The notes below the pieces were generated by a model. That model worked only from the letters and a program-made list of their open reading frames with translations. It did no database searches and was not told where the DNA came from. A DNA stretch of 63,148 nucleotides, filler included, from Salisapilia sapeloensis CBS 127946 (lineage: Eukaryota; Protista; Oomycota): NCBI GenBank assembly GCA_023334545.1. It is 10 parts of 10 records of this genome, joined end to end, with 100 filler letters (N's around TTAATTAATTAA, not from the genome) between each part and the next. Parts side by side here need not be neighbours in the genome. Positions count along the whole stretch, not along the records: positions 1 to 20,078 come from JAADVB010000303.1; 9 more parts are not named here. One strand, given 5' to 3'. Below are positions 1 to 13,986 of this stretch, piece after piece. The number at the start of each line of letters is the position of its first letter. Position 1 is the stretch's first letter. The position numbers were made by a program, and so were the translations under genes.

Positions 1-1671
1 AGTTCGATCATTAACTATGCAGCCATTCAGATGAAGACAAGCGCTAACAACATGCTTGCTTTACACTTCCGGCGCCGGCTTCGGCAGTATATCCACTTTC
101 GGTATGCTACGAATGATGTGATAAAATTGAACAGAAAGGAAGAAACACGCCTTGTTGAAAGCTGCTATCCGATTCAAAAGGTTCCAATTCTAGACAATGA
201 TGGTCAACCTACCCAAGACACCAGGCCACTTTGGACCGAGTGGGATCATACAAACAATTCCTTAAAGCTAGAACTGCGTCATTGACTTGCTATGGTGCCA
301 TGGCCACTTACGATTTGACGCAACACAGGACATTTTATCCGTAAGTTACATGATATGCTAAGATGGATGGAGATGTTTGTGGCCAAACACCCGCGTACGA
401 AGGGATCAAAACTCTACTCTTTATTACCAGTCTCTACGTCGTATCAGCCACTCTTCATTACCATCTCTTCTCACAGTTTATACAACATCTTTGCCCAGCT
501 CAAACAAAGCAATAGCTTCAAGAAGTACCTGCGCAGTAAGCTAGATATTGAGTTGGATCGGCGTCTTAAATCAGATTCGCAGCTACCTTTTAGTAAAACA
601 ACTTTTGCTGTGCACGGTAAAAACTCCTAAGGAAAGTCTTCAATGTGGCACCCTTCGAAACTAAGCATCGGACATTTGGTAACCAAATGACTACGAACGG
701 ATATTCGGTGTCAATTTCGATGCATTGTCTACAAGAAGCGACTACTGACGTCACGCTAGATGCCCAAACAAGAAACTTAGACAGCACGATGGAAAGACAG
801 TGTCCATGCATCAAAACAAAACCACCTGAATTACTTTAGAGACGCACTCTCTAAGCTCGGTCCCGAATATGAACCAGCTGTGCTTATCGGGATAGACCCG
901 GGGATGCGGACACTTGTAACCGCCGCAACGGTGGGTCACCTGCACCGAAGGCGTCGGAAAAAACCTCCCTATACAGATGTTGAGACCGATACGTCGGAGG
1001 ATATTCAAAAGCAAGGCTTCAAGAAATTTATATCGGTTGACGCGCAAGAATGTCGCCATCTAGCTAAGTTCGGTGACTATGCACAATGGCATGAAGACTT
1101 AAAGTCTCGTGAGCCGTGGTATCGCTCAATCCTTAGCGCCGTACCTTCACACAAGGTATCCAGCTACGAAGACTACGTCATCCGCCTCCCATTCTTTTGG
1201 AAGCACCTTAGCTTCATGTTGACATTCACAGCAGTAGAAGGCTTTCGGAGGTGGCGATTCACGCGCAGGAGAGCGAGCATGAAGGCTCTTGAAACCATTG
1301 CAATCCCATCGATGAATACCGAACGAGGAAGACGTATTCGTCTTGTCACCAGCGTCTCCATCAAGCTCGCCTTTTTACAAAAATAACAGGCGAATGAGGA
1401 CATCAGAACCAAAACACGTCGATCAAAAAAGAAGCTGAAGGAGATTGGTGAGATGCACAAATTTAAAAAAGCACGCCTGGCGGATAAAACGATTAGGCTA
1501 ACATGTACCGGAAACGTTCTACACTGTGCGAACAGTAAATGCACGGCAAACTTCTGGAACCGAGACGTCAACTCGGCTCTGAGCATCCTTGAGCAACTTA
1601 GATATGGTTTAAAGGAAAAGCATGGGGCCATTAAAATTCGAGTTATGCGGCGTGGACTACCAAAGATGTAG
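1..1671 (+). pseudogene. Fragmented Fanzor1 (eukaryotic TnpB-like RNA-guided RuvC nuclease); 5' part extends beyond the window start
   Basis: The + ORFs 31-285, 355-630, 645-839, 880-1386 and 1453-1671 stitch into one protein. RuvC-I GIDPG (Asp codon 895-897). RuvC-II IDEYRTRKT..C in a shifted frame (Glu codon 1314-1316, absent from the ORF track). Zn-ribbon C-x4-C then RuvC-III WNRDVNSA (Asp codon 1564-1566). Premature stops at 283, 316, 628 and 1384, plus several frameshifts. Confidence 0.85.
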
Positions 1672-1680
1672 AAAGGATTC

Positions 1681-1736
1681 ATGTAGGCGGAAAGCTATGC
1701 AGCACATGTGCTGCGGAAACGCGTAGCCGTCTACAT
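1681..1736 (+). ncRNA. Candidate Fanzor omegaRNA scaffold / transposon right end (nested stem-loop)
   Basis: Begins 10 nt after the Fanzor stop. ATGTAGGCG (1681-1689) pairs with CGTCTACAT (1728-1736). GCTATGC (1694-1700) pairs with GCGTAGC (1721-1727). Perfect 16-bp palindrome GCAGCACATGTGCTGC (1699-1714). GCG-GAAA-CGC tetraloop hairpin (1713-1722). Transcription is not shown. Confidence 0.45.
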
Positions 1737-2954
1737 CCATATATTGCTGAGCACATACGGAAGACTAGTACGGATGCCAGTGACCTTTCGTTCTCGCATA
1801 GAATAGCCGGTAAGAACAATAGAAAATGAGAGCTCAACCCATTGCTTACTCGGACCATTTCATCGCTCTAGCATCATGAACGGTGTTCAAGCTCACGCTT
1901 TATCGTTTATAATAGCAAGTCCAAGATTTGTCATGTACAATTTGAAGTCTGGGATGGTCTAGGAAGGTAGCTTTGGAGTTTGCATAGCAGTAAGTCGCAG
2001 CAAATGATGTCTAGACAGTTTAGTTCATGTAGTTGCAACAATCTCTCTGCTGATATCGTCATAATGTCATGGAAACTGTCAGACTGACCACTTCTGCTGT
2101 CATGAATCGTCTCGCTCCATGCTCAGACTCGTAGTACATTGAGAGCTTTTGACTATTAGGACATGATGGAGCTGCACAGTCTGCTTACCAGTATACACCA
2201 GAAGCTTAATTCCCCTTCTCAGCATGTGCCAACATAAACATGCATATTCATGAGAGCCCTTCCTACCCTACGATGCTAAGCGAAAGGCTAAGATAGACAT
2301 TAAGACTATGTTCGCGCTGAATACAGATTCAGCAATATTGGGGATTCACATTTTGTATTTCGATTTATCACTTGTCATTAAGAGCCTAACGTGACAATTC
2401 AATACAAAATTTCCGACTAACGAGGAATGCAAGAAGAAGTGATCGTTCGCCTTCGATGCGATCAGGAGGAAACCATCTTCGAGAATACTTCAAGTCGCGT
2501 CTGGTGCTCGACATATGCACATTTGAAAAAGCGCGCGAACGACTTGGTAAGCTCTTCGCTTTACTTGCGCTAGTGAGTTCTTCGCCATGTCATTGGGACG
2601 AAGTACAGCATGGATCGCAAATATCGCTCAATCATTTCATCCAACACGGTACTATATCTGTTCCGAAAGATAAGCGAAGAGCTCACTAGCGCAATTAAAT
2701 CGAATGACAGTTCAACCTGAAGGGCTTCGAGGATACACCACGATATACCCAACACTATGCCCCGCCAAGGTTTGGCTGAGGAGCGGACAATATACATGGA
2801 TAGAAAGGTAAATGTGGATAGCGATGTAAGAGTAGGACGAACTAATCAAAGAGTTTGACATCGGTTCCTGCTACAGTTTTAGCGTTTTTGTTCACATAAT
2901 GCGTAACGCTCCTTGCTTAATGCCCGAATTTCTGTTCAGCGAATACGGTCTTAA

Positions 2955-3229
2955 CAAATGCAAGGATCAGTCTACACGCAAGCTAAGAGTAAGCGGTATA
3001 CATCTTTGTGTCCAAAATGAAGGCAGACGAAAAGGAACGAAGGTATCAGATCTGCGAAGGAGACCTTGATGGGCCGTTGATTCATGAAGGAAACTTGATC
3101 GGTGTATCCTCATGGACTTTTGCCTATTGCAAAAAAAGAATAAGAATGATTTTCACCAAGGTCAGTGCTGTTTGTGATCTTATTAATGAAGCAGCAAAAC
3201 TTGGTCTGGACAGCCGCAGCGAGAACTGA
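2955..3229 (+). pseudogene. Decayed trypsin-like (S1) serine protease C-terminal fragment
   Basis: CEGDLDGPL..EGNLIGVSSW...C......FTKVS resembles C.GDSGGPL....LIGVVSWG..C.....YTRVS. The catalytic Ser position is Leu. An upstream C..LC segment lies in another frame. Confidence 0.55.
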
Positions 3230-4721
3230 ACTTCTTAATCGAAAATGACTTTAATTTAAGATTGCTGTTCATGCTATAACCTCAGTAGAGCGTTATGTTT
3301 GTGTTCTTTTGAAGGTTTCGTAAGTTCTATCTCACCCATTGACAGACGAGGAACGTATCGAGCATTGTCTAGTGTTCCTCATTCTCCTTTGTGGTGCTCA
3401 GAGAAATTCCTTTGTTTTTCTCGCGCATACTGTGCAAAGTGCTTGCTCGGACATAGGTAGATGACTAAACACATAAATTCAATTCAATGTGTAAATTGCT
3501 TGCTGATCCTACTAGTGATAGCGAGCGCTAGGCGAGTAGCATCCAATGAACATGATAGTATCCGACAGATTTATACGGAGAATTAACTAGAAGAGCTGAA
3601 CAACATCATAATGCGTACTCAGTCAAAGCAAATTGAACCAATTTGCGCTTGGAGATGTATGCTATGAAACCGACAGCTGGTAAACACGAGCAGTCAATAT
3701 TGGTCTTAGCAAGAAAGTAGGCAATCACATGCTGAGATTAGAATTTAAATGAGAAATGGATTGGTACATCAAGTGTAGCAAAACATTACTAGATTCGACA
3801 TTCTGCTATACCTGGTCTATGACTAGTAGATGCTGGATGCGTTTCAGATGCCATTGTTTGCAAGGCCTGATCCTCAACGGCGTTCACACCTTTTGCTCTG
3901 GCATTCAGACAGACACGATACCACACTGCTCTCACACTCATCGATTTTTCGCGGCTATCTACGTTTTCTTCCTATATCACGATATGGACACGGCAATCTA
4001 CAATAACACATGCTAGTCTGCTATCTCAACACTAAAAATCTCCCTCCATCTACATTTATATAACTAGCTACCACCAGGAACGCAAAGCAAAGCATTGTGA
4101 ATCGGTCAAGAAAGCATGGAAAAAGGTTTTATTCCATGTGGTCAAGTTATTCGACTAACTCGATGAAATTGATTGAAAAGTGGTAAATGCACAAAGCTGC
4201 TGGGTGCACCGGGACTTGAAAGCTCTCGCTAGTATATAAACCTGCGATGAAAATGTTCGTGCATACCTTATGTAAGTCTTTTCTAGTCGCTCATGACCTC
4301 GCCGACTTCCAGTCATACTTGGACGTTCAATAGATACAGACACCCGGCCATATCATTACACAAGATCCGCCGGTCCTTCAGACATCGCTACCATCTTTAA
4401 AATGCAATTGACTTTTCTTCGTTGACAAAAGGACGTATGACCAAGTCTATAAAACCCTAGATACTTTAAATTCCCTCAAGCAGAGTTCAGAAACCGAGAC
4501 TCGATATTCCACAACTTCATGTTTATCATCGTATCCATTCTACGCATATGACACCGTCTCACAGTAGAATCTAATCTCTACCTTTTACAGTCGTAAATTC
4601 TACCGTTTAGTCTAAAACCATGACAAAAGTCCACGTGGACCATATCTGAGGCGTCAAAGGAGCTGTAGGGAGAGGTCCAAGGGATCGCACGCTGAGCGCA
4701 CGAGATTCATCGTTCGAGAGC

Positions 4722-7283
4722 ATGTACAACCAGAATCAAAACTACGGTCAGAACCCAAACTACGGCCAGGCCGGCGGTCAAGACCAATACGCTCAGCAGC
4801 AGTATGCGCAGCAGCAGCAATACGCGCAGCAGCCTGGATACCAGGATTATCAGCAGCAAGGGTATGCTCAACAGGGGTACCAGCAAGATTATAGCCAGCA
4901 GCAAGACTACAGCCAGCAGCAGTACAACCAGTACGACCAGTACAATGGCCAGGGGTACGAGCCGGAGCCATCGATGCCAGGTCAGCAGCCTGGCGAGTGG
5001 GACTTTGCCGGCATGGAGGCCAAGGACGGCATCCGCTTTTCGTGGAACAGTTGGCCTAGCACCAAGCTGGAGCAGACGCGCAGTGTCGTGCCACTTGGGT
5101 GCCTGTACCAGCCTCTGAAGCCGATCGAAGGCATGCCTCCTGCGCTCGAGTACGATCCGATTCAGTGCAAGTCGTGCGCTTCGGTCTTGAATCCGTTCTG
5201 CCAAGTGGACTTTGTCAGTAAGCTCTGGGTCTGTCCGTTCTGCGTCACGCGCAACCAGTTCCCGCCGCACTATGCCGAGAATATTACGCAGGAGAACCTC
5301 CCAGCGGAGCTCATTCCGCAGTACTCGACGCTCGAGTACGAGCTGCAGGATCGTCAGGCCGGCCCACCTGTGTTCGTCTTTTGTATCGACACCTGTGTGC
5401 ATGAAGAGGAGCTGGAGCAGCTCAAGGACTCGATCCAGCAGACGCTCAACCAGCTCCCGCCCGACGCGCTCGTGGGGCTCGTCACCTTCGGCACGATGGT
5501 CCACGTGCATGAGCTAGGCTTCACGGACGTCCCCAAGTCCCACGTCTTCCGCGGGAACAAGGACTTTACGGCGCAGCAGATCCACGACATGCTCGGCCTG
5601 GCAGTCGTGAACCGAGGACCGCAGCAGCAGCAGCAGCAGCATACGAATAACGCCAGTCGCTTCCTCTTGCCGGTGCTTGACTGCGGCTTCCACGTCGAGT
5701 CCATTCTCGAGGACTTGCAACGAGACCCGTGGCCCGTGGCAGCCGACCAGCGCGCGCAGAGATGCACTGGTGTCGCTCTGAGCGTCTGCGTCGGTCTGCT
5801 CGAATCGACGTATCGTGGCCAAGGCGCTCGGATCATGGCGTTTGTCGGCGGCCCACCGACCGTCGGGCCTGGCAGCATCGTCAACCGCGACCGGAAGGAG
5901 GACATCCGGTCGCACACAGACCTCCAGAAGGACCGCGCGCCTCTGACCAAGACGGCCGTGGAGCACTATGCGCACTTGGCGGATCGATGCGTCAAGTCAC
6001 ATCACGTCCTCGACATCTTTGCCTGCTCTTTAGACCAGAGTGGCGTGATGGAGATGAAGCCTTGCGTCCAGCGCACGGGAGGCGTCGTCGTCCTTGCGGA
6101 TTCGTTCGGCCAGTCTGTCTTCCGCGAGTCCTTCAGTCGTATGTTCGCCAAGTTTTCGGACGAAGCCGCCGAGTGCGATCGAGACCACTTGACGATGGCG
6201 TTCGCAGGGAGTCTCGAAGTGCTCACGAGTCGAGAGTTCAAGGTCGCAGGTGCCATCGGTCCCTGTGCTGCCTCCCACCGCCAAGGCGCAGCGCCCAAGA
6301 ACGTGGCCGAGACACAGATCGGCGTCGGCGGCACGAACACATGGTCTATGGGTGGCCTCGACCCGAACACGACGCTTGCGCTCTACTTTGACGTGTCGAA
6401 CCAAGGCTCACTGGCGCCTGGCAAAGGCCGCTACCTGCAGCTCATCACGCGCTATCAGCATGCCAGCGGACGCTATCGCACGCGCGTGACGACCATCTGC
6501 GGTCCGTGGACGACGGATCCGAACGATACGCACTCGCTCGCTCGCAGCTTTGACCAGGAAGCCGCGGCCGTGCTCTTGGCACGCATCGCCGTGCACCGGT
6601 CGGAGCAAGGGGAGGAGCAGCTGGACATCATGCGCTGGATCGACCGGTCGCTCATCCGCCTCGCGTCGAGGTTTGCCGACTACCGAGCCGACGACCCGTC
6701 GAGCTTCCGCCTTCCGCCCGAGTTTTCCATTTTCCCTCAGTTCATGTTCCACCTCCGTCGATCGCAGTTCCTGACGGTCTTTGGGTACTCTCCGGATGAA
6801 AGCGCTTACTATCGCCATTCGTTACTACGAGAGAACGCGACGAACTCGTTGGTCATGATCCAACCGTCGCTTTTATCCTACTCCTTCAATGGCCCGCCAG
6901 AGCCTGCGCTCTTGGACTCGACGAGCGTCCGACCAGATACGATCTTACTACTGGATTCCTTCTTCTACGTCGTCGTCTTCCACGGCGACACGATCGCTGC
7001 GTGGCGAGACCAAAAGTACCATGAGGATCCGGCACATGAGCACTTCAAGAACCTGCTGGAAGCTCCGCAGGCAGATGCGCAGTTGATCATGGACTCGCGG
7101 TTCCCAGTCCCGAGATACATTGTGTGCGACCAGCACAAGAGTCAATCTCGGTTCCTAATGGCCAAGCTGAATCCGTCGACGACGCACAACAGCATGGACG
7201 GCCAGGGTGAAGTCATCTTCACGGACGACGTGTCGCTCAAGGTCTTCATGGAGCACCTGATCAACCTCGCGGTCAAGTCGTAG
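4722..7283 (+). CDS. SEC23: COPII coat protein Sec23 with Q/Y/G/N-rich N-terminal extension
   Basis: 853-aa ORF containing [11 protein letters not shown], Zn finger C..C..LNPFC..WVCPFC, trunk [52 protein letters not shown] and [15 protein letters not shown]. Confidence 0.97.
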
Positions 7284-7299
7284 GAATACTCGTTCTTTC

Positions 7300-7374
7300 T
7301 CTTTTCTTTGGGTGATGTGTTCTTTTCTTTGGGTGACGTGCTCTTTTCTTTGGATGACACTTTCTTTTCTTTGG
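7300..7374. repeat. 21-bp tandem repeat (about 3.6 copies) downstream of Sec23
   Basis: Units TCTTTTCTTTGGGTGATGTGT / TCTTTTCTTTGGGTGACGTGC / TCTTTTCTTTGGATGACACTT / TCTTTTCTTTGG. Confidence 0.85.
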
Positions 7375-7534
7375 CCAAGTACCGTCCGTTACTAAAAGAG
7401 GGTGGAAGAGGCTATTTATACGCCAGCATACTCTAGCCAAGTGGATTTTTCCACCTTGGGTTCTATGCCACAGTCCAGTTTCCCAGTGAGAAGGCGGCGA
7501 CTAGTAGCTCGAGGCGTCTGCTGAGAGAAACTTC

Positions 7535-10500
7535 ATGACGGACAAGGAGCCGTATTTACGCGCTGAGAGCATGTCGACGGACGATGCGCATGTCGAGGCA
7601 GAGATCGTGCGTCCGAGTGCCTCCATACGCGTTACGCAGAGCCGACCGACGTTTAGTGACGCCGGCTCCGGCCGAGGGCTCGGGACGAACGACCATGGGC
7701 CTAACCAGCCGCCGATGAACGTCGGGTCGAGCGACGCAGGCGATCTGGACGATAACATCATCTCTGTCCACGGGTACATGCACAAGCAGGGCAAGCGGAC
7801 GATCAAAGGTCCGATCCACAAGAGCTGGAAGCGTCGGTACTTTGCGTTGGAGAAAGCCAAGATCTACTACTTCCACAGCCACTTGGACTGTCGACAGTAC
7901 TTCACCACTCGCAACGCAGATCTGGTGGTGGGCGCCGTGGAGCTTAAGGACGCGCTGCAGCTGCGTCCTTGTGCCCGACTCGACCTGCCGCATAAGGGCT
8001 TTGAGATCCACACGAAGCGCCGGGTGTGGGTCCTGTGTCCCGAGACGGATGACGAGTACCGCATGTGGTTCCAAGGCGTCGAACGCGCCATCGTCGGGAA
8101 CGGTGCTGGGAACATCATCGAGCGCAAGCTGCCCAACGTCCGCAAGTACCAGATGAAGGGCAACCAGACGTACCGTGTCTTTTACTTTATCTTCCTCCTG
8201 ACGGGTCTCATGGAGCTCCTGGGCCTGGCCTTCTGGTTTGTCGTGGGCGTCGAGCCATGCGACGCCGCTCGACCGACGATCGACTGCGGGAAGATCATGA
8301 GCAACACGCTCAACGTCCTCCGCTGTCGTCCGGAACCCATGAGCGGGGTCCTCACGCCTGCCGACTGGTACATGCAGATCGCCGGCGTGGACGACGTCAA
8401 GTGTTTCCACGACCCGCCGATCCTCCAGTGGATCTCGTTCTTTGCTCTGGGCTTTGCAGAGGTCCTGAGCTTCTTCCTCGGGACCTTGTACTACTTGGGC
8501 ATGTGGAAGCCAGTGCGTCGAGGAGCGCACTACTTTGACGAGTTCGAGCCTCGTGTCCCGGATGAGCTCTGGCCTCGTGTCGATGTGCTACTGTGCCACT
8601 ACTCAGAGCCGGCGGAGGAGACGATCGATACGCTCATGGCGTGTGTGAACCTGCAGTACCCTCCGCATCTGCTCCAGATCTACGTCCTGGACGACGGCTA
8701 CTGCAAGAGCAAGTGGACCAAGGGGAACCCGGTGCCGACGGTGGAACTCAACAAGGGCATTCTCGAGACGGCAGGAGACTTGCGTCAGGAAGTCGCGCAG
8801 TTCATGTACGATCGGGTGTGCGACCCGAATGAAGAGATGGAGGTGTATGCGTGGCGGAAGCTGCATTCGTCTGCGAACCTCCCGTCGGCTTCTCGTGTCA
8901 AGGTGGTGAATCGAGCGGACTGTGCTGCTGGATCCTTCCGAGACGACTATCGGTACCCTGGTCTACCCCATGTGACGTACATTGGTCGCGTCAAGCCAGA
9001 GGTGCACTACTCCAAGGCAGGCAACATCAACAATTGTCTCTACAACGAAGGTGCGAATGGCAAGTACCTCATGATCCTCGATACGGACATGCAGCCGCAC
9101 CCCAAGTTCATCTTAGCCACTCTTCCCTTCTTCTTTGACGACGAAGACAGACAGGACAAGAGCACGTACGCTTGCTGCTGCACTGGCTGTAGCAACGTCG
9201 CCAAGCTCTGCTGCGCCTCGTGCAAGATCGCAGGCGTGCCGGAGGAGAGCATGAGCTACTGCTCGAAAGAGTGCTTTGAGAACGCCATGCACGCGCGGAG
9301 CGACGTCCATCGACGACAGGTGAACGGGACGCTCAACGACAATACGGAGACCAAGGAGCTCCGGTGCATGAAGTGCGACACCAAGCTCGGGAAGCAGGGC
9401 TTCTGCCGCAAGTGCCAGAACACGGAGGGAGACGGGCAGACGGCGACGCTGTCGACGTACTCGGACGACGTGCAGCACAACTCGGTCGCCTTCGTCCAGA
9501 CGCCACAGTACTTTCGAGACTGCGTCCAGCTGCAGATCGGAGACCCGATGGGCCATCGTAACGCGACATTCTACGACGCCATCCAGACTGGACAAGATGG
9601 ATACGAGTGCGCTTCGTTCGCCGGCACGAACGCCATGTTCCGCCGAGAAGCGCTGGACTCGATCGCGGGCATTCAGTACGGCAGTCTGACGGAGGACTGC
9701 TACACCGGCCAGATGCTGTGCGGCATGGGCTGGAAGGCGCTGTACTTCCGGAAGGACTTTGAAGGCGAGGCGACGGAGCGCATTCGGCTTGCAGAAGGAC
9801 TCATCCCCGAGACGGTGGCCAACAGTCTGGCGCAGCGGAAGCGGTGGGCCAAGGGCAACTTCCAGATCGCTCTGATGAAGAAGGACAAGAAGCTCGTGGA
9901 TCCCGAGTGGAGGCAGCCGCACGTCGAGCTCCCGCCAGCGCGCAAGAGCAACAAGTTTATGCGCCGAGTCTTCTACCTGAACTCGACCTTGTACCCGCTC
10001 GGATCCATCTCGGCGCTCCTCTTTTGCTACATTACCATCTACTTTTTGTACACCGGCTACGCACCCATCTACATGAGTGGCCTGCGGCTATTGATCGCTC
10101 TCGTGCCCAAGCTCTTGGTCCAAGGACTCTTGTCTGCGCTGAGCAACCGGACGGTCGAGAACAACGACGTCATCCGGTCGCAGGAAGTCTGGTTCGCCTA
10201 TGCGTTCACCAACTGCACGGCCGTCGCGGAGGCCTTTTGGTGGAAGATCACGGGCAAGGAGCCGCGGTGGTTCAACACCGGAGGCGCGAACCGAGGATCG
10301 CTCGCGGAAGTCCCGAACGTCATTGTCTTTATGGGCACGTGCGTCGGCATCGCCTGGGCGATTGTGCGCTTCTTGGCAGGGTACAATGTGGAGCAAACGT
10401 CGCATGGCGCGTCGTTGCTGTTCGCAAGTCTGCTGATGGGCCTGTTCATCGCCGTCAAGCTCGGCCCGAGCGTCCGCATGAGCATCCAGGAGTACTTTGG

Positions 10501-10621
10501 CTGGAGCTACCAGAGCATGATGGACCAGGGCAACTTTTTCGGGAGCGTCTCGATGGCCGTGGGCTTCGCCTTCATCGTCCTGTGGGTGTACATCGAAAAG
10601 CCCTCGAGCAATCCGTTTTAA
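7535..10621 (+). CDS. CesA: Cellulose synthase with N-terminal PH domain (oomycete CesA1/CesA2 type), copy A
   Basis: 1028 aa, intronless. PH domain (GYMHKQG..WKRRYF..W), GT2 motifs LDDG, KAGNINN, DTD, QTPQYF, TED, QRKRW, and multiple TM helices. Confidence 0.96.
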   Translation: MTDKEPYLRAESMSTDDAHVEAEIVRPSASIRVTQSRPTFSDAGSGRGLGTNDHGPNQPPMNVGSSDAGDLDDNIISVHGYMHKQGKRTIKGPIHKSWKRRYFALEKAKIYYFHSHLDCRQYFTTRNADLVVGAVELKDALQLRPCARLDLPHKGFEIHTKRRVWVLCPETDDEYRMWFQGVERAIVGNGAGNIIERKLPNVRKYQMKGNQTYRVFYFIFLLTGLMELLGLAFWFVVGVEPCDAARPTIDCGKIMSNTLNVLRCRPEPMSGVLTPADWYMQIAGVDDVKCFHDPPILQWISFFALGFAEVLSFFLGTLYYLGMWKPVRRGAHYFDEFEPRVPDELWPRVDVLLCHYSEPAEETIDTLMACVNLQYPPHLLQIYVLDDGYCKSKWTKGNPVPTVELNKGILETAGDLRQEVAQFMYDRVCDPNEEMEVYAWRKLHSSANLPSASRVKVVNRADCAAGSFRDDYRYPGLPHVTYIGRVKPEVHYSKAGNINNCLYNEGANGKYLMILDTDMQPHPKFILATLPFFFDDEDRQDKSTYACCCTGCSNVAKLCCASCKIAGVPEESMSYCSKECFENAMHARSDVHRRQVNGTLNDNTETKELRCMKCDTKLGKQGFCRKCQNTEGDGQTATLSTYSDDVQHNSVAFVQTPQYFRDCVQLQIGDPMGHRNATFYDAIQTGQDGYECASFAGTNAMFRREALDSIAGIQYGSLTEDCYTGQMLCGMGWKALYFRKDFEGEATERIRLAEGLIPETVANSLAQRKRWAKGNFQIALMKKDKKLVDPEWRQPHVELPPARKSNKFMRRVFYLNSTLYPLGSISALLFCYITIYFLYTGYAPIYMSGLRLLIALVPKLLVQGLLSALSNRTVENNDVIRSQEVWFAYAFTNCTAVAEAFWWKITGKEPRWFNTGGANRGSLAEVPNVIVFMGTCVGIAWAIVRFLAGYNVEQTSHGASLLFASLLMGLFIAVKLGPSVRMSIQEYFGWSYQSMMDQGNFFGSVSMAVGFAFIVLWVYIEKPSSNPF

Positions 10622-10920
10622 TCTTTCTTTTTCTTTTCTTTCGCAATACACATCCTCTCTTTTCTTTTTCTTTTTCGTAGAAGTGGTGCTGCCACGAGCA
10701 TGTCCTGCGTCTTCTCCCCTCTTTCCAAGCACCTTGACAATCGTTTCACATGCCGCTGTGCCTATAACGGGCGTCGTCTCCACTCTCCAAAGTGCCTCGA
10801 GGTGCCTCGTAGGTGAGAATCCAGTTCCGACCGGTCTTTGACTTGGCGTTTGTATGTAGACGGTAGAGACCGGCCGAAAAGAGGTGGTTTCGTCATTTCT
10901 CTAACTTGGACCAAGTACAG

Positions 10921-13900
10921 ATGGACCGCTCGTCCTCTCTCCAGGACGACGCCGACTACGAGCGATACGACACGCCGTCGGCGGCCGACGTACAGGTCTC
11001 GCGCCCTGGTGTCGCCCCCACAGCCACGCAGCCGCATGGATTCGCCGAGCCGCCAGCGCCCTTCGAGCCGGCCATGGACGTGACGCCCACGCCAGACGCA
11101 GACGTCCACGCCGACAACGTCATCTCTGTCCACGGGTACATGCACAAGCAGGGCAAGCGGACGATCAAGGGTCCGATCCACAAGAGCTGGAAACGCCGCT
11201 ACTTTGCGTTGGAGAAGACCAAAATCTTCTACTTCCACAGCCACCTCGAGTGTCGACAGTACTTTACGACGCGGAATCCGGATCTAGTGGTGGGTGCGAT
11301 TGAGCTCAAGGACGCGCTGCAGCTACGCCCGTGTGCTCGGTTGGATCTGCCGCATAAGGGCTTTGAGGTGCTGACGAAGCGCCGGGTGTGGGTCCTGTGT
11401 CCCGAGACGGACGACGAGTACAATCTGTGGTTTGACGGCGTCGAGAGTGCCATCGTCGCAGCAGGGTCGGGGAATATCGTCGAGCGCAAGTTGCCCAACG
11501 TCCGCAAGTACTATATGAAAGGCATTGCGACGTACCGTCTTCTCTACGTGCTCTTCGTCATCGTCGGTCTGCTCGAGCTCTTCGGCCTCTTGTTCTGGTT
11601 CAGCGTTGGCGTCGAGCCGTGCGATCCGTCCAACCGACTCTACGAGTGTGAGCGCGTGTACGCGAACTCTCCGAACGCGCTCAACTGTCGAGAGGAGCCA
11701 ATGGGCGGTGTCTTCCAGCCGCCGGAGTGGTACATGGAGCTCGCAGGCGTCGATGACGTTGCTTGTTTCCACGATCCGCCTGTGGCGCAGTGGATTTCGT
11801 ACATCGCCATGATCGTCGCAGAGCTCGTGGCGTGGGTCATGGGAAGTCTCTACTACTTGGGCATGTGGAAGCCAGTGCGTCGAGGAGCGCACTACTTTGA
11901 CGAGTTCGAGCCTCGTGTCCCGGATGAGCTCTGGCCGATGGTCGACGTCCTCTTGTGCCACTACTCGGAGCCGGCGGAGGAGACGATCGATACGCTCATG
12001 GCGTGCATGAACCTCCACTACCCTCCCCACCTGCTGCACATCTACATCCTAGACGACGGCTACTGCACTGCGACGTGGACCAAGGGCAGTCCGACGCCGG
12101 ATATTGAGCTGAATAAAGAGGTACTGGAGAAGTCGGGGGACTTAAGGCAGGAGCTGGCGCAGTTCATGTACGACCGAGTGTGCGACCCGAATGAAGAGAT
12201 GGAGGTGTATGCGTGGCGGAAGCTGCATTCGTCTGCGAACCTCCCGTCTCCGTCGCGTCCAAAGGTCGTGAATCGATCGGACTGTGCCGTCGGATCCTTC
12301 CGAGACGACTATCGATACACAGACCTTCCGCACGTGACGTACATTGGTCGCGTGAAGCCTCAAGTGCACTACTCGAAAGCAGGGAACATCAACAATTGTC
12401 TCTACAACGAAGGCGCCAGCGGTCGATACATGCTGGTGCTGGATTCAGACATGCAGCCGCACCCCAAGTTCATCCTAGCGACGCTTCCCTTCTTCTTTGA
12501 CGATGAAGATAGGAAGCTCAAGCACAAGTACACTTGCTGCGGCACGGGGTGCAACAATGTCGCGCGCATGTGCTGCGCCTCGTGTAAGATCGCAGGCGTG
12601 CCCGAGGAACGCATCAGCTACTGCTCGAAAGAGTGCTTTGAGAACGCCATGCACGTGGCGAGTGACATTCATCGTCGACAGGTGAACGGCACTGTGAGCG
12701 ACACGACGACCAAGAAGAAGGAGCTCCGGTGCTCTTCGTGCGGCGCCAAAGTGAACAAGAAGGGCGTCTGTCGCAAGTGCCACTCGACGACCGACGGAGG
12801 AGACGTCTCGGTCCTGCACACCTACTCGGACGACGTGCGAGACAACGCCGTGGCGTTCGTCCAGACACCGCAGTACTTTCGAGACTGCGTCCAGCTGCAG
12901 ATCGGAGACCCGCTCGGACATCGCAACGGAACGTTCTACGACGCCATCCAGACCGGGCAGGATGGGTACGACTGCGCGTCCTTTGCCGGCACGAACGCCC
13001 TCGTGCGCCGAGAAGCGCTGGACTCGATCGGAGGCATTCAGTACGGCGTCTTGACGGAAGACTGCTTCACTGGCCAGCGACTGGTCCAGCAGGGGTGGAA
13101 GGCCTTGTTCTTCCGGAAGGACTTTGAAGGAGACGTGTCGGAGCGCATTCGGCTGGCGGAAGGCATCATCCCGGACTCGGTGGCGGCGTCCTTGGCGCAG
13201 CGGAAGCGATGGGCCAAGGGCAACTTCCAGACATTCTTAATGCGAAAGAACAAGGTCGGGAGCCCCGACCCCGAGTGGAGGCAGCCCGAGGTCGCGACGC
13301 CCAAGTACCGCAAGCCCAACCGCCTCATGCGCCGCATCTTCTACATGAACTCGACCTTGTATCCGCTCTCGTCGCTCTCGGTCCTCCTCTTCTACTACAT
13401 CACCATCTGCTTCCTCTACACAGGCTACGCGCCCATCTACCTCAACGGCCTGCGGTTGCTTATCGCCATGATCCCGCGCATCCTCGTCCAAGGCATGCTG
13501 GCGGCGCTGGCCAACCGGACGGTCGACAGCAACGACGTCGCGCGGTCGCAGGAAGCGTGGTTCATCTACGCCTTCACCAACTGCACCGCCATGTTCGGCG
13601 CCATCGTGTGGAAGCTGACGGGCAAGAAGTCGCGCTGGCTGAACAAGCGAGACGCCACGCGCGGATCCATGGCCGAGCTCCCGAACATCCTCGTTTTCTT
13701 CGGCGCCGTCTTTGGCATCATTTGGGCTGTCGTGAGGTACATGGTCGGCTATTACAATCGCATTGAGAGCCATGGTGACTCGATGCTGACGGCGAGTGTC
13801 CTCATGGGCTTTTTCATCGTGTTCAAGCTCGGCCCGAGCGTCCGTATGAGCATCCAGGAGTACTTTGGCTGGAGCTACCAGAGTCTGATGGACCAGGGCA

Positions 13901-13986
13901 ACTTTATGGGCTCCACGTCCATCGCCTTTGGACTCATCTTCATCGTCCTGTGGGTGTACGTGGAGCGCCCGGCATCCTCCGCCTAG
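10921..13986 (+). CDS. CesA: Cellulose synthase with N-terminal PH domain (oomycete CesA1/CesA2 type), copy B
   Basis: Tandem paralog with the same PH domain and D,D,D,QxxRW set (LDDG, DSD, TED, QRKRW). First ATG is at 10921; the ORF track starts at an upstream TTG. INR-like TCATTTC at 10893. Confidence 0.96.
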   Translation: MDRSSSLQDDADYERYDTPSAADVQVSRPGVAPTATQPHGFAEPPAPFEPAMDVTPTPDADVHADNVISVHGYMHKQGKRTIKGPIHKSWKRRYFALEKTKIFYFHSHLECRQYFTTRNPDLVVGAIELKDALQLRPCARLDLPHKGFEVLTKRRVWVLCPETDDEYNLWFDGVESAIVAAGSGNIVERKLPNVRKYYMKGIATYRLLYVLFVIVGLLELFGLLFWFSVGVEPCDPSNRLYECERVYANSPNALNCREEPMGGVFQPPEWYMELAGVDDVACFHDPPVAQWISYIAMIVAELVAWVMGSLYYLGMWKPVRRGAHYFDEFEPRVPDELWPMVDVLLCHYSEPAEETIDTLMACMNLHYPPHLLHIYILDDGYCTATWTKGSPTPDIELNKEVLEKSGDLRQELAQFMYDRVCDPNEEMEVYAWRKLHSSANLPSPSRPKVVNRSDCAVGSFRDDYRYTDLPHVTYIGRVKPQVHYSKAGNINNCLYNEGASGRYMLVLDSDMQPHPKFILATLPFFFDDEDRKLKHKYTCCGTGCNNVARMCCASCKIAGVPEERISYCSKECFENAMHVASDIHRRQVNGTVSDTTTKKKELRCSSCGAKVNKKGVCRKCHSTTDGGDVSVLHTYSDDVRDNAVAFVQTPQYFRDCVQLQIGDPLGHRNGTFYDAIQTGQDGYDCASFAGTNALVRREALDSIGGIQYGVLTEDCFTGQRLVQQGWKALFFRKDFEGDVSERIRLAEGIIPDSVAASLAQRKRWAKGNFQTFLMRKNKVGSPDPEWRQPEVATPKYRKPNRLMRRIFYMNSTLYPLSSLSVLLFYYITICFLYTGYAPIYLNGLRLLIAMIPRILVQGMLAALANRTVDSNDVARSQEAWFIYAFTNCTAMFGAIVWKLTGKKSRWLNKRDATRGSMAELPNILVFFGAVFGIIWAVVRYMVGYYNRIESHGDSMLTASVLMGFFIVFKLGPSVRMSIQEYFGWSYQSLMDQGNFMGSTSIAFGLIFIVLWVYVERPASSA

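What the first reader, a model, noticed from the sequence alone, without database searches (positions are those of the whole stretch)
1..1671. Decayed Fanzor1 RNA-guided nuclease with all three RuvC catalytic codons still present
Seen: five ORF pieces plus an unlisted frame (1308-1395, IDEYRTRKTYSSCHQRL) give the order RuvC-I (GIDPG), RuvC-II (DEYRT), Zn-ribbon, RuvC-III (RDVNSA). Established: this is the TnpB/Fanzor architecture of transposon-encoded RNA-guided DNA endonucleases. Inference: this copy is dead (at least 4 stops, several frameshifts, and an apparent deletion just before RuvC-II at about 1302-1308). Motif decay is light, so intact relatives may exist elsewhere in this genome, i.e. 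a programmable nuclease family in this oomycete. The host transposon type cannot be seen because the left end is outside the window.
Basis: partly seen in the sequence, partly recalled or inferred. Interest (0 to 1): 0.8.

Follow-up and report, generated by a model that had tools for sequence, protein, structure and literature searches.

The report
Dead Fanzor1 nuclease gene with guide-RNA relic
The left end of this oomycete window holds a broken, non-functional copy of a Fanzor1 transposon nuclease, a family known in oomycetes since 2013, followed by a recognisable remnant of its probable guide-RNA scaffold; it is real but ordinary.

Summary
Window 4-1668 (+) is collinear with residues 138-755 of intact 705-755 aa proteins from Phytophthora and Nothophytophthora (phmmer E 4.7e-34 for one piece). 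A profile of these homologs hits only solved Fanzor1 structures: SpuFz1 5.7e-30, GtFz1 8.8e-27, PpFz1 5.9e-25.

The SpuFz1 active-site residues D383, E541 and D606 fall on the window codons 895-897 (GIDPG), 1314-1316 (IDEYRT) and 1564-1566 (NRDVN). All three catalytic codons are therefore present.

The copy is dead:
- two in-frame stops (283-285, 316-318);
- at least three frameshifts;
- an out-of-frame loss of about 45 codons at 1302/1303, which removes the conserved 'CIAYGDWS...PVKG' core segment;
- loss of one zinc-ribbon cysteine (Tyr at 1335-1337).

The N-terminal ~137 residues lie beyond the piece's edge.

New here: a conserved, covarying structured element sits directly after the stop codon of oomycete Fanzor1 genes and is probably the omegaRNA scaffold. 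A model built without the window finds it at 1672-1777 (52.6 bits, E 1.2e-11). RNA-run contigs cover 1254-1826 at low depth.

Other copies exist in this genome, but none is shown to be intact. Fanzor1 in Pythium, Phytophthora and Albugo was reported in 2013, so novelty is low.

The parts
1..282 (+). Pseudogene piece 1 (frame 1). It is N-terminal-half (REC/WED-side) sequence aligned to P0003 residues ~138-231. The protein's first ~137 residues lie off the left edge of the piece.
283..318 (+). Two in-frame nonsense codons (283-285 TGA, 316-318 TGA) inside aligned coding sequence ('H*LAMVPWPLTI*RNTGHF' against 'HKWLGMVPWEHVIRDNLGHF').
   Evidence: In DNA run X1 another copy reads TGG at 283-285 (A285G) but keeps 316-318.
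319..627 (+). Pseudogene piece 2 (frame 1), aligned to P0003 ~244-350. A frameshift at ~624 moves the reading to frame 3.
633..836 (+). Pseudogene piece 3 (frame 3), with the conserved 'VFxVxxxET..R.F....TNGY' block. The return to frame 1 lies somewhere in 730-845, in a variable basic linker.
841..1302 (+). Pseudogene piece 4 (frame 1). It holds RuvC-I (GIDPG, Asp codon 895-897) and the following helical insertion up to '...MKALETIA'.
   Evidence: E 4.7e-34, match ends at query residue 154. One search places SpuFz1 D383 on this column.
1302..1308 (+). Junction of an out-of-frame deletion of about 45 codons (~135 bp). Relatives have 'KRxVPxASxQVCIAYGDWSxxDxIKGHxxxPVKGxxxALKxRATVx' here. This is the strand at the canonical RuvC-II position, with Gly in place of Glu.
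   Evidence: A paralogous X1 contig aligns to 1305-1744 and stops at the junction with 188 further unaligned bases.
1308..1394 (+). Pseudogene piece 5 (frame 3), 'IDEYRTRKTYSSCHQRLHQARLFTK'. It holds the alternative RuvC-II Glu (1314-1316). TS has decayed to TR. The first zinc-ribbon Cys is replaced by Tyr (1335-1337); the second Cys is kept (1344-1346).
   Evidence: One search places SpuFz1 E541 on this column.
1390..1671 (+). Pseudogene piece 6 (frame 1). It holds the basic linker, the second zinc-ribbon pair (Cys 1525-1527 and 1540-1542), RuvC-III 'NRDVNSA' (Asp 1564-1566), the natural C-terminus and the stop at 1669-1671.
   Evidence: The only PDB hit of this piece is Guillardia theta Fanzor1. 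One search places SpuFz1 D606 on this column.
1672..1777 (+). Remnant of the conserved structured non-coding element that follows the stop codon of oomycete Fanzor1 genes, the candidate omegaRNA scaffold. The outer stem is 1682-1689 with 1728-1735 (5' arm GTAGGCGG, 3' arm CCGTCTAC) and the nested hairpin is ~1696-1718. The third hairpin, which carries the right TIR in relatives, is not recognisable.
   Evidence: Covariance model R2, built without the window, scores 52.6 bits (E 1.2e-11) and this is the only hit in 20 kb. Covariation is shown.
1254..1826 (.). Stretch covered by exact-match contigs in three RNA runs at low depth (4-9.5). Strand is unknown.
   Evidence: Neighbouring single-copy non-coding stretches (1921-2240, 2881-4480) have zero RNA depth, while Sec23 has 90-195.

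Best explanation
Window 1-1671 (+) is the C-terminal ~80% of a dead Fanzor1 gene. Fanzor1 is the eukaryotic TnpB-like, omegaRNA-guided RuvC DNA endonuclease carried by DNA transposons. This copy belongs to a lineage widespread in peronosporalean and pythialean oomycetes.

In intact relatives the protein is about 700-755 aa. It has a RuvC-I Asp in 'GIDPG' and a Gly at the canonical RuvC-II position ('GDWS'). The compensating Glu sits in 'DE[YF]RTSxxCxxC', followed by a C4 zinc ribbon and a RuvC-III Asp in 'RDVNAARN'.

The window copy keeps all three catalytic codons but cannot make a nuclease:
- two nonsense codons;
- at least three frameshifts;
- an out-of-frame ~135-bp deletion that removes a core RuvC strand;
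- loss of one zinc ligand.

Directly after the stop codon lies a decayed copy of a ~125-nt structured element conserved after the stop codon of Fanzor1 genes in several Phytophthora species and Pythium oligandrum. In Phytophthora cactorum this element runs into the right terminal inverted repeat of a ~3.4-kb TIR-bounded element flanked by TA. By analogy with SpuFz1, it is most likely the omegaRNA scaffold.

Shown here: homology, motif collinearity, the lesions, the conserved covarying RNA element, multicopy status and low-level RNA coverage. Inferred: that the element is an omegaRNA, that the host transposon is Tc1/mariner-like, and that the copy was inactivated before some of its duplications.
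For: Sequence homology:
- phmmer of 841-1383 gives 90 hits, best E 4.7e-34.
- The full collinear frameshift-aware alignment to P0003 is 220/595 identical.
- The homologs are Phytophthora, Nothophytophthora, Globisporangium and Pythium proteins.
- Several carry Pfam PF07282 Cas12f1-like_TNB above threshold.

Family assignment:
- A profile of 16 full-length homologs against the PDB hits SpuFz1 8gkh at 5.7e-30, GtFz1 9cer at 8.8e-27 and PpFz1 9cf0 at 5.9e-25. The next hit is at E 0.26.
- The SpuFz1 Mg-coordinating residues D383, E541 and D606 (PMC10432273) align to the three motif columns (chain offset 394 checked by counting).
- The C-terminal piece alone hits GtFz1 as its only PDB match.
- ESM Atlas neighbours carry DUF8286 and Cas12f1-like_TNB.

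Lesions. The exact sequence of 884-4800 is reproduced in DNA run X1.

RNA element:
- Shared stem seen by eye.
- The RNAalifold consensus has 26 pairs, 7 of them with compensatory changes.
- A window-free covariance model hits 1672-1777 at 52.6 bits.
- On the model-fitted alignment, 91.7% of cells are paired against 34-46% when partners are slid. Ten pairs have double changes against 4.2+-1.4 in shuffles, 0 of 500 reaching the observed value.

Transposon ends in a relative: P. cactorum TIRs at L003 676-700 and 4078-4102, with TA on both sides.
Against: - Pfam and NCBIfam-type profile scans of the window pieces themselves give nothing. Family assignment therefore rests on transitive homology through oomycete proteins.
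- The omegaRNA reading is by position, structure and analogy only. There is no small-RNA data, no strand information and no binding evidence.
- The covariation test used only 11 sequences from a few related lineages, on an alignment fitted to the model, and one row is a doubtful reverse-strand hit (E 0.74).
- The third hairpin and right TIR are not recognisable in the window, so the right boundary of the element here is uncertain.
- TA target-site duplication and TIRs were seen in one relative only.
Confidence: 0.93

Rival explanations
1. The gene is functional. The stops and frame changes lie in introns or are bypassed by splicing or recoding, so an active Fanzor1 is made from this locus.
For: RNA-run contigs cover 1254-1826. 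Some eukaryotic Fanzor genes have introns (PMC10530073, abstract).
Against: - Both nonsense codons sit inside codon-by-codon aligned conserved sequence, not in unaligned insertions.
- No extra sequence separates the frames, so there is no room for introns.
- 45 conserved residues, including the 'GDWS' core strand, are simply absent from the DNA.
- One zinc ligand is lost.
- RNA coverage starts only at ~1254 and is 10-40 times lower than on the neighbouring Sec23 gene.
Confidence: 0.01
2. The lesions are assembly or sequencing artefacts at a contig end inside a repeat, and the real locus is intact.
For: Positions 1-880 have no exact counterpart in DNA run X1, only 95-99% variants at 1.7-2.7 times baseline depth. 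One variant turns the stop at 283-285 into Trp. The left 880 bases may therefore be a blend of paralogs or come from another isolate.
Against: - 884-4800 is reproduced exactly by X1 contigs. This includes the deletion junction and the frameshift at 1387.
- X1 variants over 1-880 show no indels and keep the stop at 316-318.
- X1 may, however, be the same sample as the assembly.
Confidence: 0.03
3. The remnant has been retained for an RNA-level role. The transcribed 3' module (omegaRNA-like scaffold plus flank) of this dead copy, and of ORF-less derivatives, serves an intact Fanzor1 elsewhere in the genome in trans, or has another non-coding function.
For: - The scaffold's two main stems are still intact.
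- Exact-match RNA contigs cover it in three runs, while flanking unique non-coding DNA has zero depth.
- The stretch 1601-1760 is ~16 times baseline at >=80% similarity.
- A contig joins at 1675 with a different left flank. This resembles the ORF-less 'ghost' elements of Spizellomyces (PMC10432273).
Against: - No intact Fanzor1 has been shown in this genome.
- The third hairpin and TIR region are decayed.
- Expression is very low and its strand unknown.
- Retention of the stems can be explained by the young age of the copy.
Confidence: 0.1
4. It is not a cellular transposon copy but a fragment of an integrated giant-virus (Nucleocytoviricota) Fanzor.
For: The top ESM Atlas feature neighbours are clusters with Nucleocytoviricota members. 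The GC content of 1-4700 (0.41-0.46) is far below that of the host genes (~0.6).
Against: - All strong sequence hits are oomycete nuclear genes in ordinary host contexts.
- No viral genes lie nearby. The flank holds a protease pseudogene and a MITE-like repeat, followed by host housekeeping genes.
- Low GC is equally expected for decaying non-coding DNA.
Confidence: 0.03

Closest known systems
Oomycete Fanzor1 families of Bao & Jurka 2013 (PUl-1..6 of Pythium ultimum, PSo, PCa, PRa, Ala; PMC3627910), and the Phytophthora cactorum Fanzor1 modelled by Yoon et al. 2023 (PMC10711439)
   Same: Same host group and same motif string, D...[TS][TS]xxC4-zinc-finger...RD. The closest database proteins are from Phytophthora, Nothophytophthora, Globisporangium and Pythium. 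A relative has TIRs flanked by TA, as described for the Mariner-type PUl elements.
   Different: The window copy is at most 63% identical to any protein retrieved, so it comes from a different species or lineage. It is a pseudogene, and its transposon ends are not visible. I did not have the Repbase consensus sequences to compare directly.
Spizellomyces punctatus Fanzor1 (SpuFz1; PDB 8GKH; PMC10432273)
   Same: The profile match is E 5.7e-30, and D383, E541 and D606 fall on the window's three motifs. [quoted passage not shown]
   Different: - Sequence identity is low outside the RuvC and zinc-ribbon core.
- The oomycete proteins are longer, with a basic linker inserted between the two halves of the zinc ribbon.
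- The candidate scaffold is ~125 nt against 75 nt in SpuFz1.
- RNA binding and cleavage are untested for the oomycete lineage.
Guillardia theta Fanzor1 (PDB 9CER)
   Same: The profile match is E 8.8e-27 over nearly the whole length. It is the only PDB hit of the window's C-terminal piece ('NVLHCANSKCTANFWNRDVNSALSILEQL' against 'HLLRCTNDSCCSRWWNRNVAGAFNILTRL').
   Different: It comes from a distant host (a cryptophyte), and the match of the window piece alone is weak (E 0.5).
Bacterial TnpB (ISDra2) and Fanzor2
   Same: They share the RuvC plus zinc-ribbon architecture, with the guide RNA encoded at the 3' end of the element.
   Different: No TnpB or Fanzor2 structure was hit by the family profile at E<=1. 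Relatives of the window copy have Gly at the canonical RuvC-II position and use the shifted Glu, which is the Fanzor/TnpB2 arrangement (PMC10530073).

Membership tests
Fanzor1 | Sequence homology to experimentally characterised Fanzor1 proteins rather than to Fanzor2 or TnpB | tested here: met
   The window piece matches oomycete proteins at E 4.7e-34. The profile of those proteins matches SpuFz1, GtFz1 and PpFz1 at E 5.7e-30 to 5.9e-25, with no TnpB or Fanzor2 hit. The link is transitive, because direct Pfam scans of the pieces are negative.
Fanzor1 | RuvC-I aspartate (SpuFz1 D383) | tested here: met
   The codon GAC at 895-897 in GIDPG lies on the column aligned to D383.
Fanzor1 | Rearranged RuvC-II: inert residue (Gly or Pro) at the canonical position, on a core beta-strand | tested here: not met
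   Relatives have 'IAYGDWS'. The window lacks this whole segment because of the ~45-codon deletion at 1302/1303. Equating this strand with the canonical RuvC-II position is inferred from PMC10530073 and was not checked structurally.
Fanzor1 | Alternative catalytic glutamate (SpuFz1 E541) in the DExxTS motif | tested here: met
   The codon GAA at 1314-1316 in IDEYRT (frame 3) lies on the column aligned to E541.
Fanzor1 | C4 zinc ribbon (TNB / OrfB_Zn_ribbon) | tested here: not met
   Three of four Cys are kept (1344-1346, 1525-1527, 1540-1542). The first is Tyr (1335-1337), and the preceding TS is TR. Pfam PF07282 is found on relatives but not on the window pieces.
Fanzor1 | RuvC-III aspartate (SpuFz1 D606) in the RD motif | tested here: met
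   The codon GAC at 1564-1566 in NRDVN lies on the column aligned to D606.
Fanzor1 | Uninterrupted open reading frame | tested here: not met
   There are two nonsense codons, at least three frameshifts and an out-of-frame deletion, and the N-terminus is off the piece.
Fanzor1 | omegaRNA encoded at the 3' end of the ORF or at the right end of the element | tested here: inconclusive
   A conserved covarying structured element follows the stop codon in relatives and in the window, and low RNA coverage is seen. Identity as an omegaRNA (binding, guide) is not testable here, and the third hairpin is missing in the window.
Fanzor1 | Residence in a transposon (TIRs and target-site duplication) | tested here: inconclusive
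   The left end is outside the piece, and the right TIR motif is not found in the window. A relative in P. cactorum has 25-nt TIRs with flanking TA. Multicopy status in this genome is shown.
Fanzor1 | RNA-guided double-strand DNA cleavage | not testable with these tools
   This needs biochemistry. It is in any case excluded for this copy by the lesions.

The most novel reading that the evidence does not exclude
This oomycete still runs a live Fanzor1 system. An intact paralog exists elsewhere in the genome. The ~125-nt conserved structured element is its omegaRNA. The transcribed scaffold of this dead copy, together with ~15 ORF-less derivative copies, supplies additional guides in trans. A dead transposon gene would then persist as a guide-RNA donor.
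Probability: 0.1. Interest if true: 0.55.

Novelty: new member of a known kind. Interest (0 to 1): 0.27.

Why it matters
The pseudogene itself matters little, and it adds one more decayed copy to a family already catalogued in oomycetes.

Two by-products may be useful:
- Apparently intact single-ORF relatives (P0003 and P0005/P0091, 705-755 aa, from Phytophthora boehmeriae and Nothophytophthora) carry all catalytic motifs.

Together these define a candidate nuclease plus omegaRNA pair for the oomycete Fanzor1 lineage. They could be tested as a compact genome-editing tool native to oomycetes.

The work also shows that many database entries for this family are unannotated or misnamed, for example as 'DptG'.

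Tried and rejected
- Pfam scan of the six window pieces at E<=10 gave no relevant hit. The NCBIfam attempt failed on coordinates and was not repeated.
- PDB phmmer of the 181-aa piece gave only chance hits.
- Rfam on 1-4800 gave only a sub-threshold hairpin hit (MIR6234, 24.7 bits against a gathering score of 90) on the MITE-like repeat. Nothing matched the Fanzor 3' region.
- Folding 1560-1830 as one RNA is not better than shuffles (z -0.76). The structure signal comes only from comparison with relatives.
- BLASTN of the window against relatives' loci finds only coding similarity. The 3' element was found by eye and then by covariance model.
- The metagenome scan for more 3' flanks failed first on a gappy alignment and then returned a single locus.
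- Looking for same-genome or near-identical proteins found no protein more than 63% identical to the window. Intact paralogs in this genome therefore could not be assessed.
- A search for the right-TIR core CACTGAGAATGTC in the window found nothing above chance.
- Literature search was uninformative.
- I considered whether 'DEYRT' was merely the start of the zinc ribbon rather than RuvC-II. I rejected this after the SpuFz1 E541 alignment and the description of the shifted glutamate.
Full report
**What is in the sequence.** The first ~4.7 kb of the piece has low GC (0.41-0.46). The gene-dense remainder is at ~0.6. That remainder encodes Sec23, two tandem PH-domain cellulose synthases, alternative oxidase, an SNF2 ATPase and PEPCK. 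PH-domain cellulose synthases are, from general knowledge, typical of oomycetes.

- GIDPG at 889-903;
- IDEYRTRKTYSSC in frame 3 from 1308;
- CTGNVLHCANSKC...NRDVNSA in frame 1;
- a natural-looking C-terminus with its stop at 1669-1671.

**Is it more than chance?** Direct Pfam scans of the pieces are empty. An exhaustive phmmer of piece 841-1383 against 1.84 billion cluster representatives nevertheless gives 90 hits at E<=1e-3, 42 of them at <=1e-10. The best is P0001 at 4.7e-34. The match covers query residues ~5-154 and stops at window ~1302.

The named hits are hypothetical proteins of Phytophthora cactorum, P. boehmeriae, P. kernoviae, P. oleae, P. palmivora, P. nicotianae, P. ramorum, Nothophytophthora sp., Globisporangium ultimum, G. 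splendens and Pythium oligandrum. Several carry PF07282 (Cas12f1-like TNB) above Pfam's threshold. ESM Atlas neighbours point the same way, to DUF8286 and Cas12f1-like_TNB.

**Collinearity and lesions.** P0003 (755 aa, P. boehmeriae) and P0005 (705 aa, Nothophytophthora) are uninterrupted proteins with all motifs. A frameshift-aware dynamic-programming alignment of P0003 to window 1-1720 runs from residue 138 to 732 against window 4-1590, with 220/595 identities. It needs:
- two in-frame stops (283-285, 316-318);
- frame changes at ~624 (frame 1 to 3), somewhere in 730-845 (3 to 1, in a variable basic linker, modelled as two events), at ~1302-1308 (1 to 3) and at ~1387 (3 to 1);
- a 45-residue gap (P0003 589-633) exactly at window 1302/1303.

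Relatives have 'KRVVPVASPQVCIAYGDWSKRDGIKGHPSGPVKGFAKALKKRATVL' at that gap. The N-terminal ~137 residues lie beyond the piece's left edge.

DNA run X1 reproduces 884-4800 without any difference, so the deletion and the 1387 shift are in the reads. X1 may be the assembly's own sample.

**Family and catalytic residues.** A profile of 16 full-length homologs (A1) searched against all PDB sequences hits only Fanzor1 entries. These are Spizellomyces punctatus (8gkh, 5.7e-30), Guillardia theta (9cer, 8.8e-27) and Parasitella parasitica (9cf0, 5.9e-25). The next hit is at E 0.26.

Saito et al. report that SpuFz1 coordinates Mg through D383, N385, E541 and D606 (PMC10432273). Counting along the printed alignment, with the MBP fusion offset of 394, gives chain D777, E935 and D1000. 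These fall on the profile columns 'liGiDPG', 'kiDEyrTS' and 'WqRDvN'. In the window they correspond to codons 895-897, 1314-1316 and 1564-1566.

Jiang et al. (PMC10530073) describe Fanzors as having Gly or Pro at the canonical RuvC-II glutamate and a compensating glutamate some 45 residues downstream. The Glu of DEYRT is that shifted residue. The 'GDWS' strand, which I infer to be the canonical position, is what the deletion removed.

The zinc ribbon retains three of four cysteines (Tyr at 1335-1337), and TS has become TR. The C-terminal piece alone finds GtFz1 as its single PDB match.

**A conserved structured RNA after the stop codon.** The 3' flanks of the window and of relatives do not align by BLASTN. 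Printing them side by side showed a shared stem with covarying arms a few bases after the stop codon:

| Source | 5' arm | 3' arm |
|---|---|---|
| window | GTAGGCGG | CCGTCTAC |
| P. boehmeriae | GTGACTGG | CCAGTCAC |
| P. cactorum | GTGGTTGG | CCAACCAC |

Each 5' arm is followed by 'AAAG'. An inner hairpin follows, then 'TAGCC', 'CCATATATT', and a third hairpin containing 'GACATTCTCAGTGCC'.

RNAalifold on six sequences predicts 26 pairs in three helices, 7 of them with compensatory changes. To avoid circularity I built a covariance model from five relatives only (A7, R2). It finds window 1672-1777 at 52.6 bits, E 1.2e-11, as the only hit in the 20 kb. The two nested stems are intact and the third hairpin is replaced by 15 unrelated bases.

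The six-sequence model also recovers weaker matches at the expected place in P. aleatoria and P. boehmeriae loci (E 5.5e-4 to 0.048). On the model-fitted alignment:
- 91.7% of cells pair, against 34-46% when partners are slid;
- 10 pairs show double changes, against 4.2+-1.4 in shuffles (0/500);
- the covariation score is 0.298 against 0.180 (0/500).

The caveats are few sequences, related lineages, a fitted alignment and one doubtful row.

In P. cactorum the third hairpin overlaps the right arm of a 25-nt terminal inverted repeat (L003 676-700 and 4078-4102, 80% complementary). The repeat bounds a ~3.4-kb element with TA on both outer sides. This is consistent with the Mariner-type oomycete Fanzor1 elements of Bao & Jurka.

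[quoted passage not shown] I therefore read the element as the omegaRNA scaffold of this lineage. This is an inference, not a demonstration.

**Copies and expression in this genome.**
- At >=95% likeness, X1 shows extra, slightly different contigs over 1-880 (depth 64-106 against a baseline of 38-43).
- One variant restores Trp at 283-285, but the 316-318 stop is shared and no indels are reported. At least some duplication therefore followed inactivation.
- At >=80% likeness, depth is ~115-160 over 641-1600, 668 over 1601-1760 and 193 over 1761-1920. It then returns to near baseline.
- A 638-base paralogous contig (depth 83.6) aligns to 1305-1744 and stops at the deletion junction with 188 further bases unaligned. 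This suggests that the paralog keeps the segment lost here.
- A contig joins at 1675 with an unrelated left flank. Together with the depth peak, this suggests ORF-less copies of the 3' module, like the 'ghost' elements of Spizellomyces.
- Three RNA runs hold exact contigs over 1254-1826 at depth 4-9.5. Adjacent unique non-coding DNA has zero depth and Sec23 has 90-195.

The last point indicates low-level transcription of the 3' part, with strand unknown. No protein more than 63% identical to the window was found in the databases, so I could not tell whether any intact paralog exists in this species.

**Comparison with what is known, and verdict.** Bao & Jurka (2013, PMC3627910) already listed Fanzor1 in Pythium ultimum (6 families), Phytophthora sojae, P. 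capsici, P. ramorum and Albugo laibachii. Yoon et al. (PMC10711439) modelled a P. cactorum Fanzor1.

The window copy is a new, dead member of a known family in a known host group. It meets the homology test and three catalytic-residue tests. It fails the intact-ORF, zinc-ribbon and canonical-strand tests.

The mildly new items are the conserved covarying 3' RNA element of the oomycete lineage and its transcribed relic beside a dead gene.

Noticed in passing
window 3008-3226 (+): This is a C-terminal remnant of a trypsin-family serine protease (Pfam PF00089, E 1.1e-5, 25.8 bits against a cut-off of 20.6, profile positions 166-220 of 220). The catalytic 'GDSGGP' box reads GDLDGP, so the active-site Ser codon is gone. 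It is an isolated pseudogene fragment, and no upstream part was found as an ORF.
   Followed up: partly
window ~2400-2740: A very high-copy repeat in this genome: depth ~2000 at >=95% and ~6000 at >=80% similarity, against a baseline of ~40. It has an imperfect inverted repeat at 2555-2585 and 2674-2704 and many internal-deletion and strand-switch joints in other copies, so it looks like a MITE-like hairpin element. The sub-threshold Rfam MIR6234 hit is just this hairpin.
   Followed up: partly
window 1-880: There is no exact counterpart in DNA run X1, only 95-99% variants, whereas 884-4800 matches exactly. The left end of the contig may be a blend of paralogs or come from another isolate.
   Followed up: no
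window 7535-10621 and 10906-13986 (+): Two tandem paralogous cellulose synthases, each with an N-terminal PH domain. This is the oomycete-type CesA arrangement.
   Followed up: no
L003 (Phytophthora cactorum WXXK01003694.1) 1-6833 vs 7037-13873: A 6.8-kb inverted duplication at 98.2% identity carries two Fanzor1 copies. The second copy has a ~39-nt deletion inside the conserved 3' RNA stem.
   Followed up: no
L002 8947-9228 and L007 2480-2761 (Nothophytophthora sp. Chile5): Both Fanzor1 copies are followed ~157 bp downstream by the same 93-aa minus-strand gene call with a weak KARI_N hit. In L002 a full KARI gene lies just upstream. The element may carry or have captured a host gene fragment.
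   Followed up: no
database entries P0109, P0159, P0160, P0175: C-terminal Fanzor1 fragments of P. palmivora, P. megakarya and Globisporangium splendens are named 'DNA phosphorothioation-dependent restriction protein DptG' in their source records. This looks like a propagated misannotation.
   Followed up: no
alignment A2 (P0001, P0037, P0044, P0077): Several annotated Phytophthora homologs lack parts of the GDWS...DEYRTS...CxxC segment. Many oomycete copies are therefore degenerate themselves, or their gene models skip lesions.
   Followed up: no
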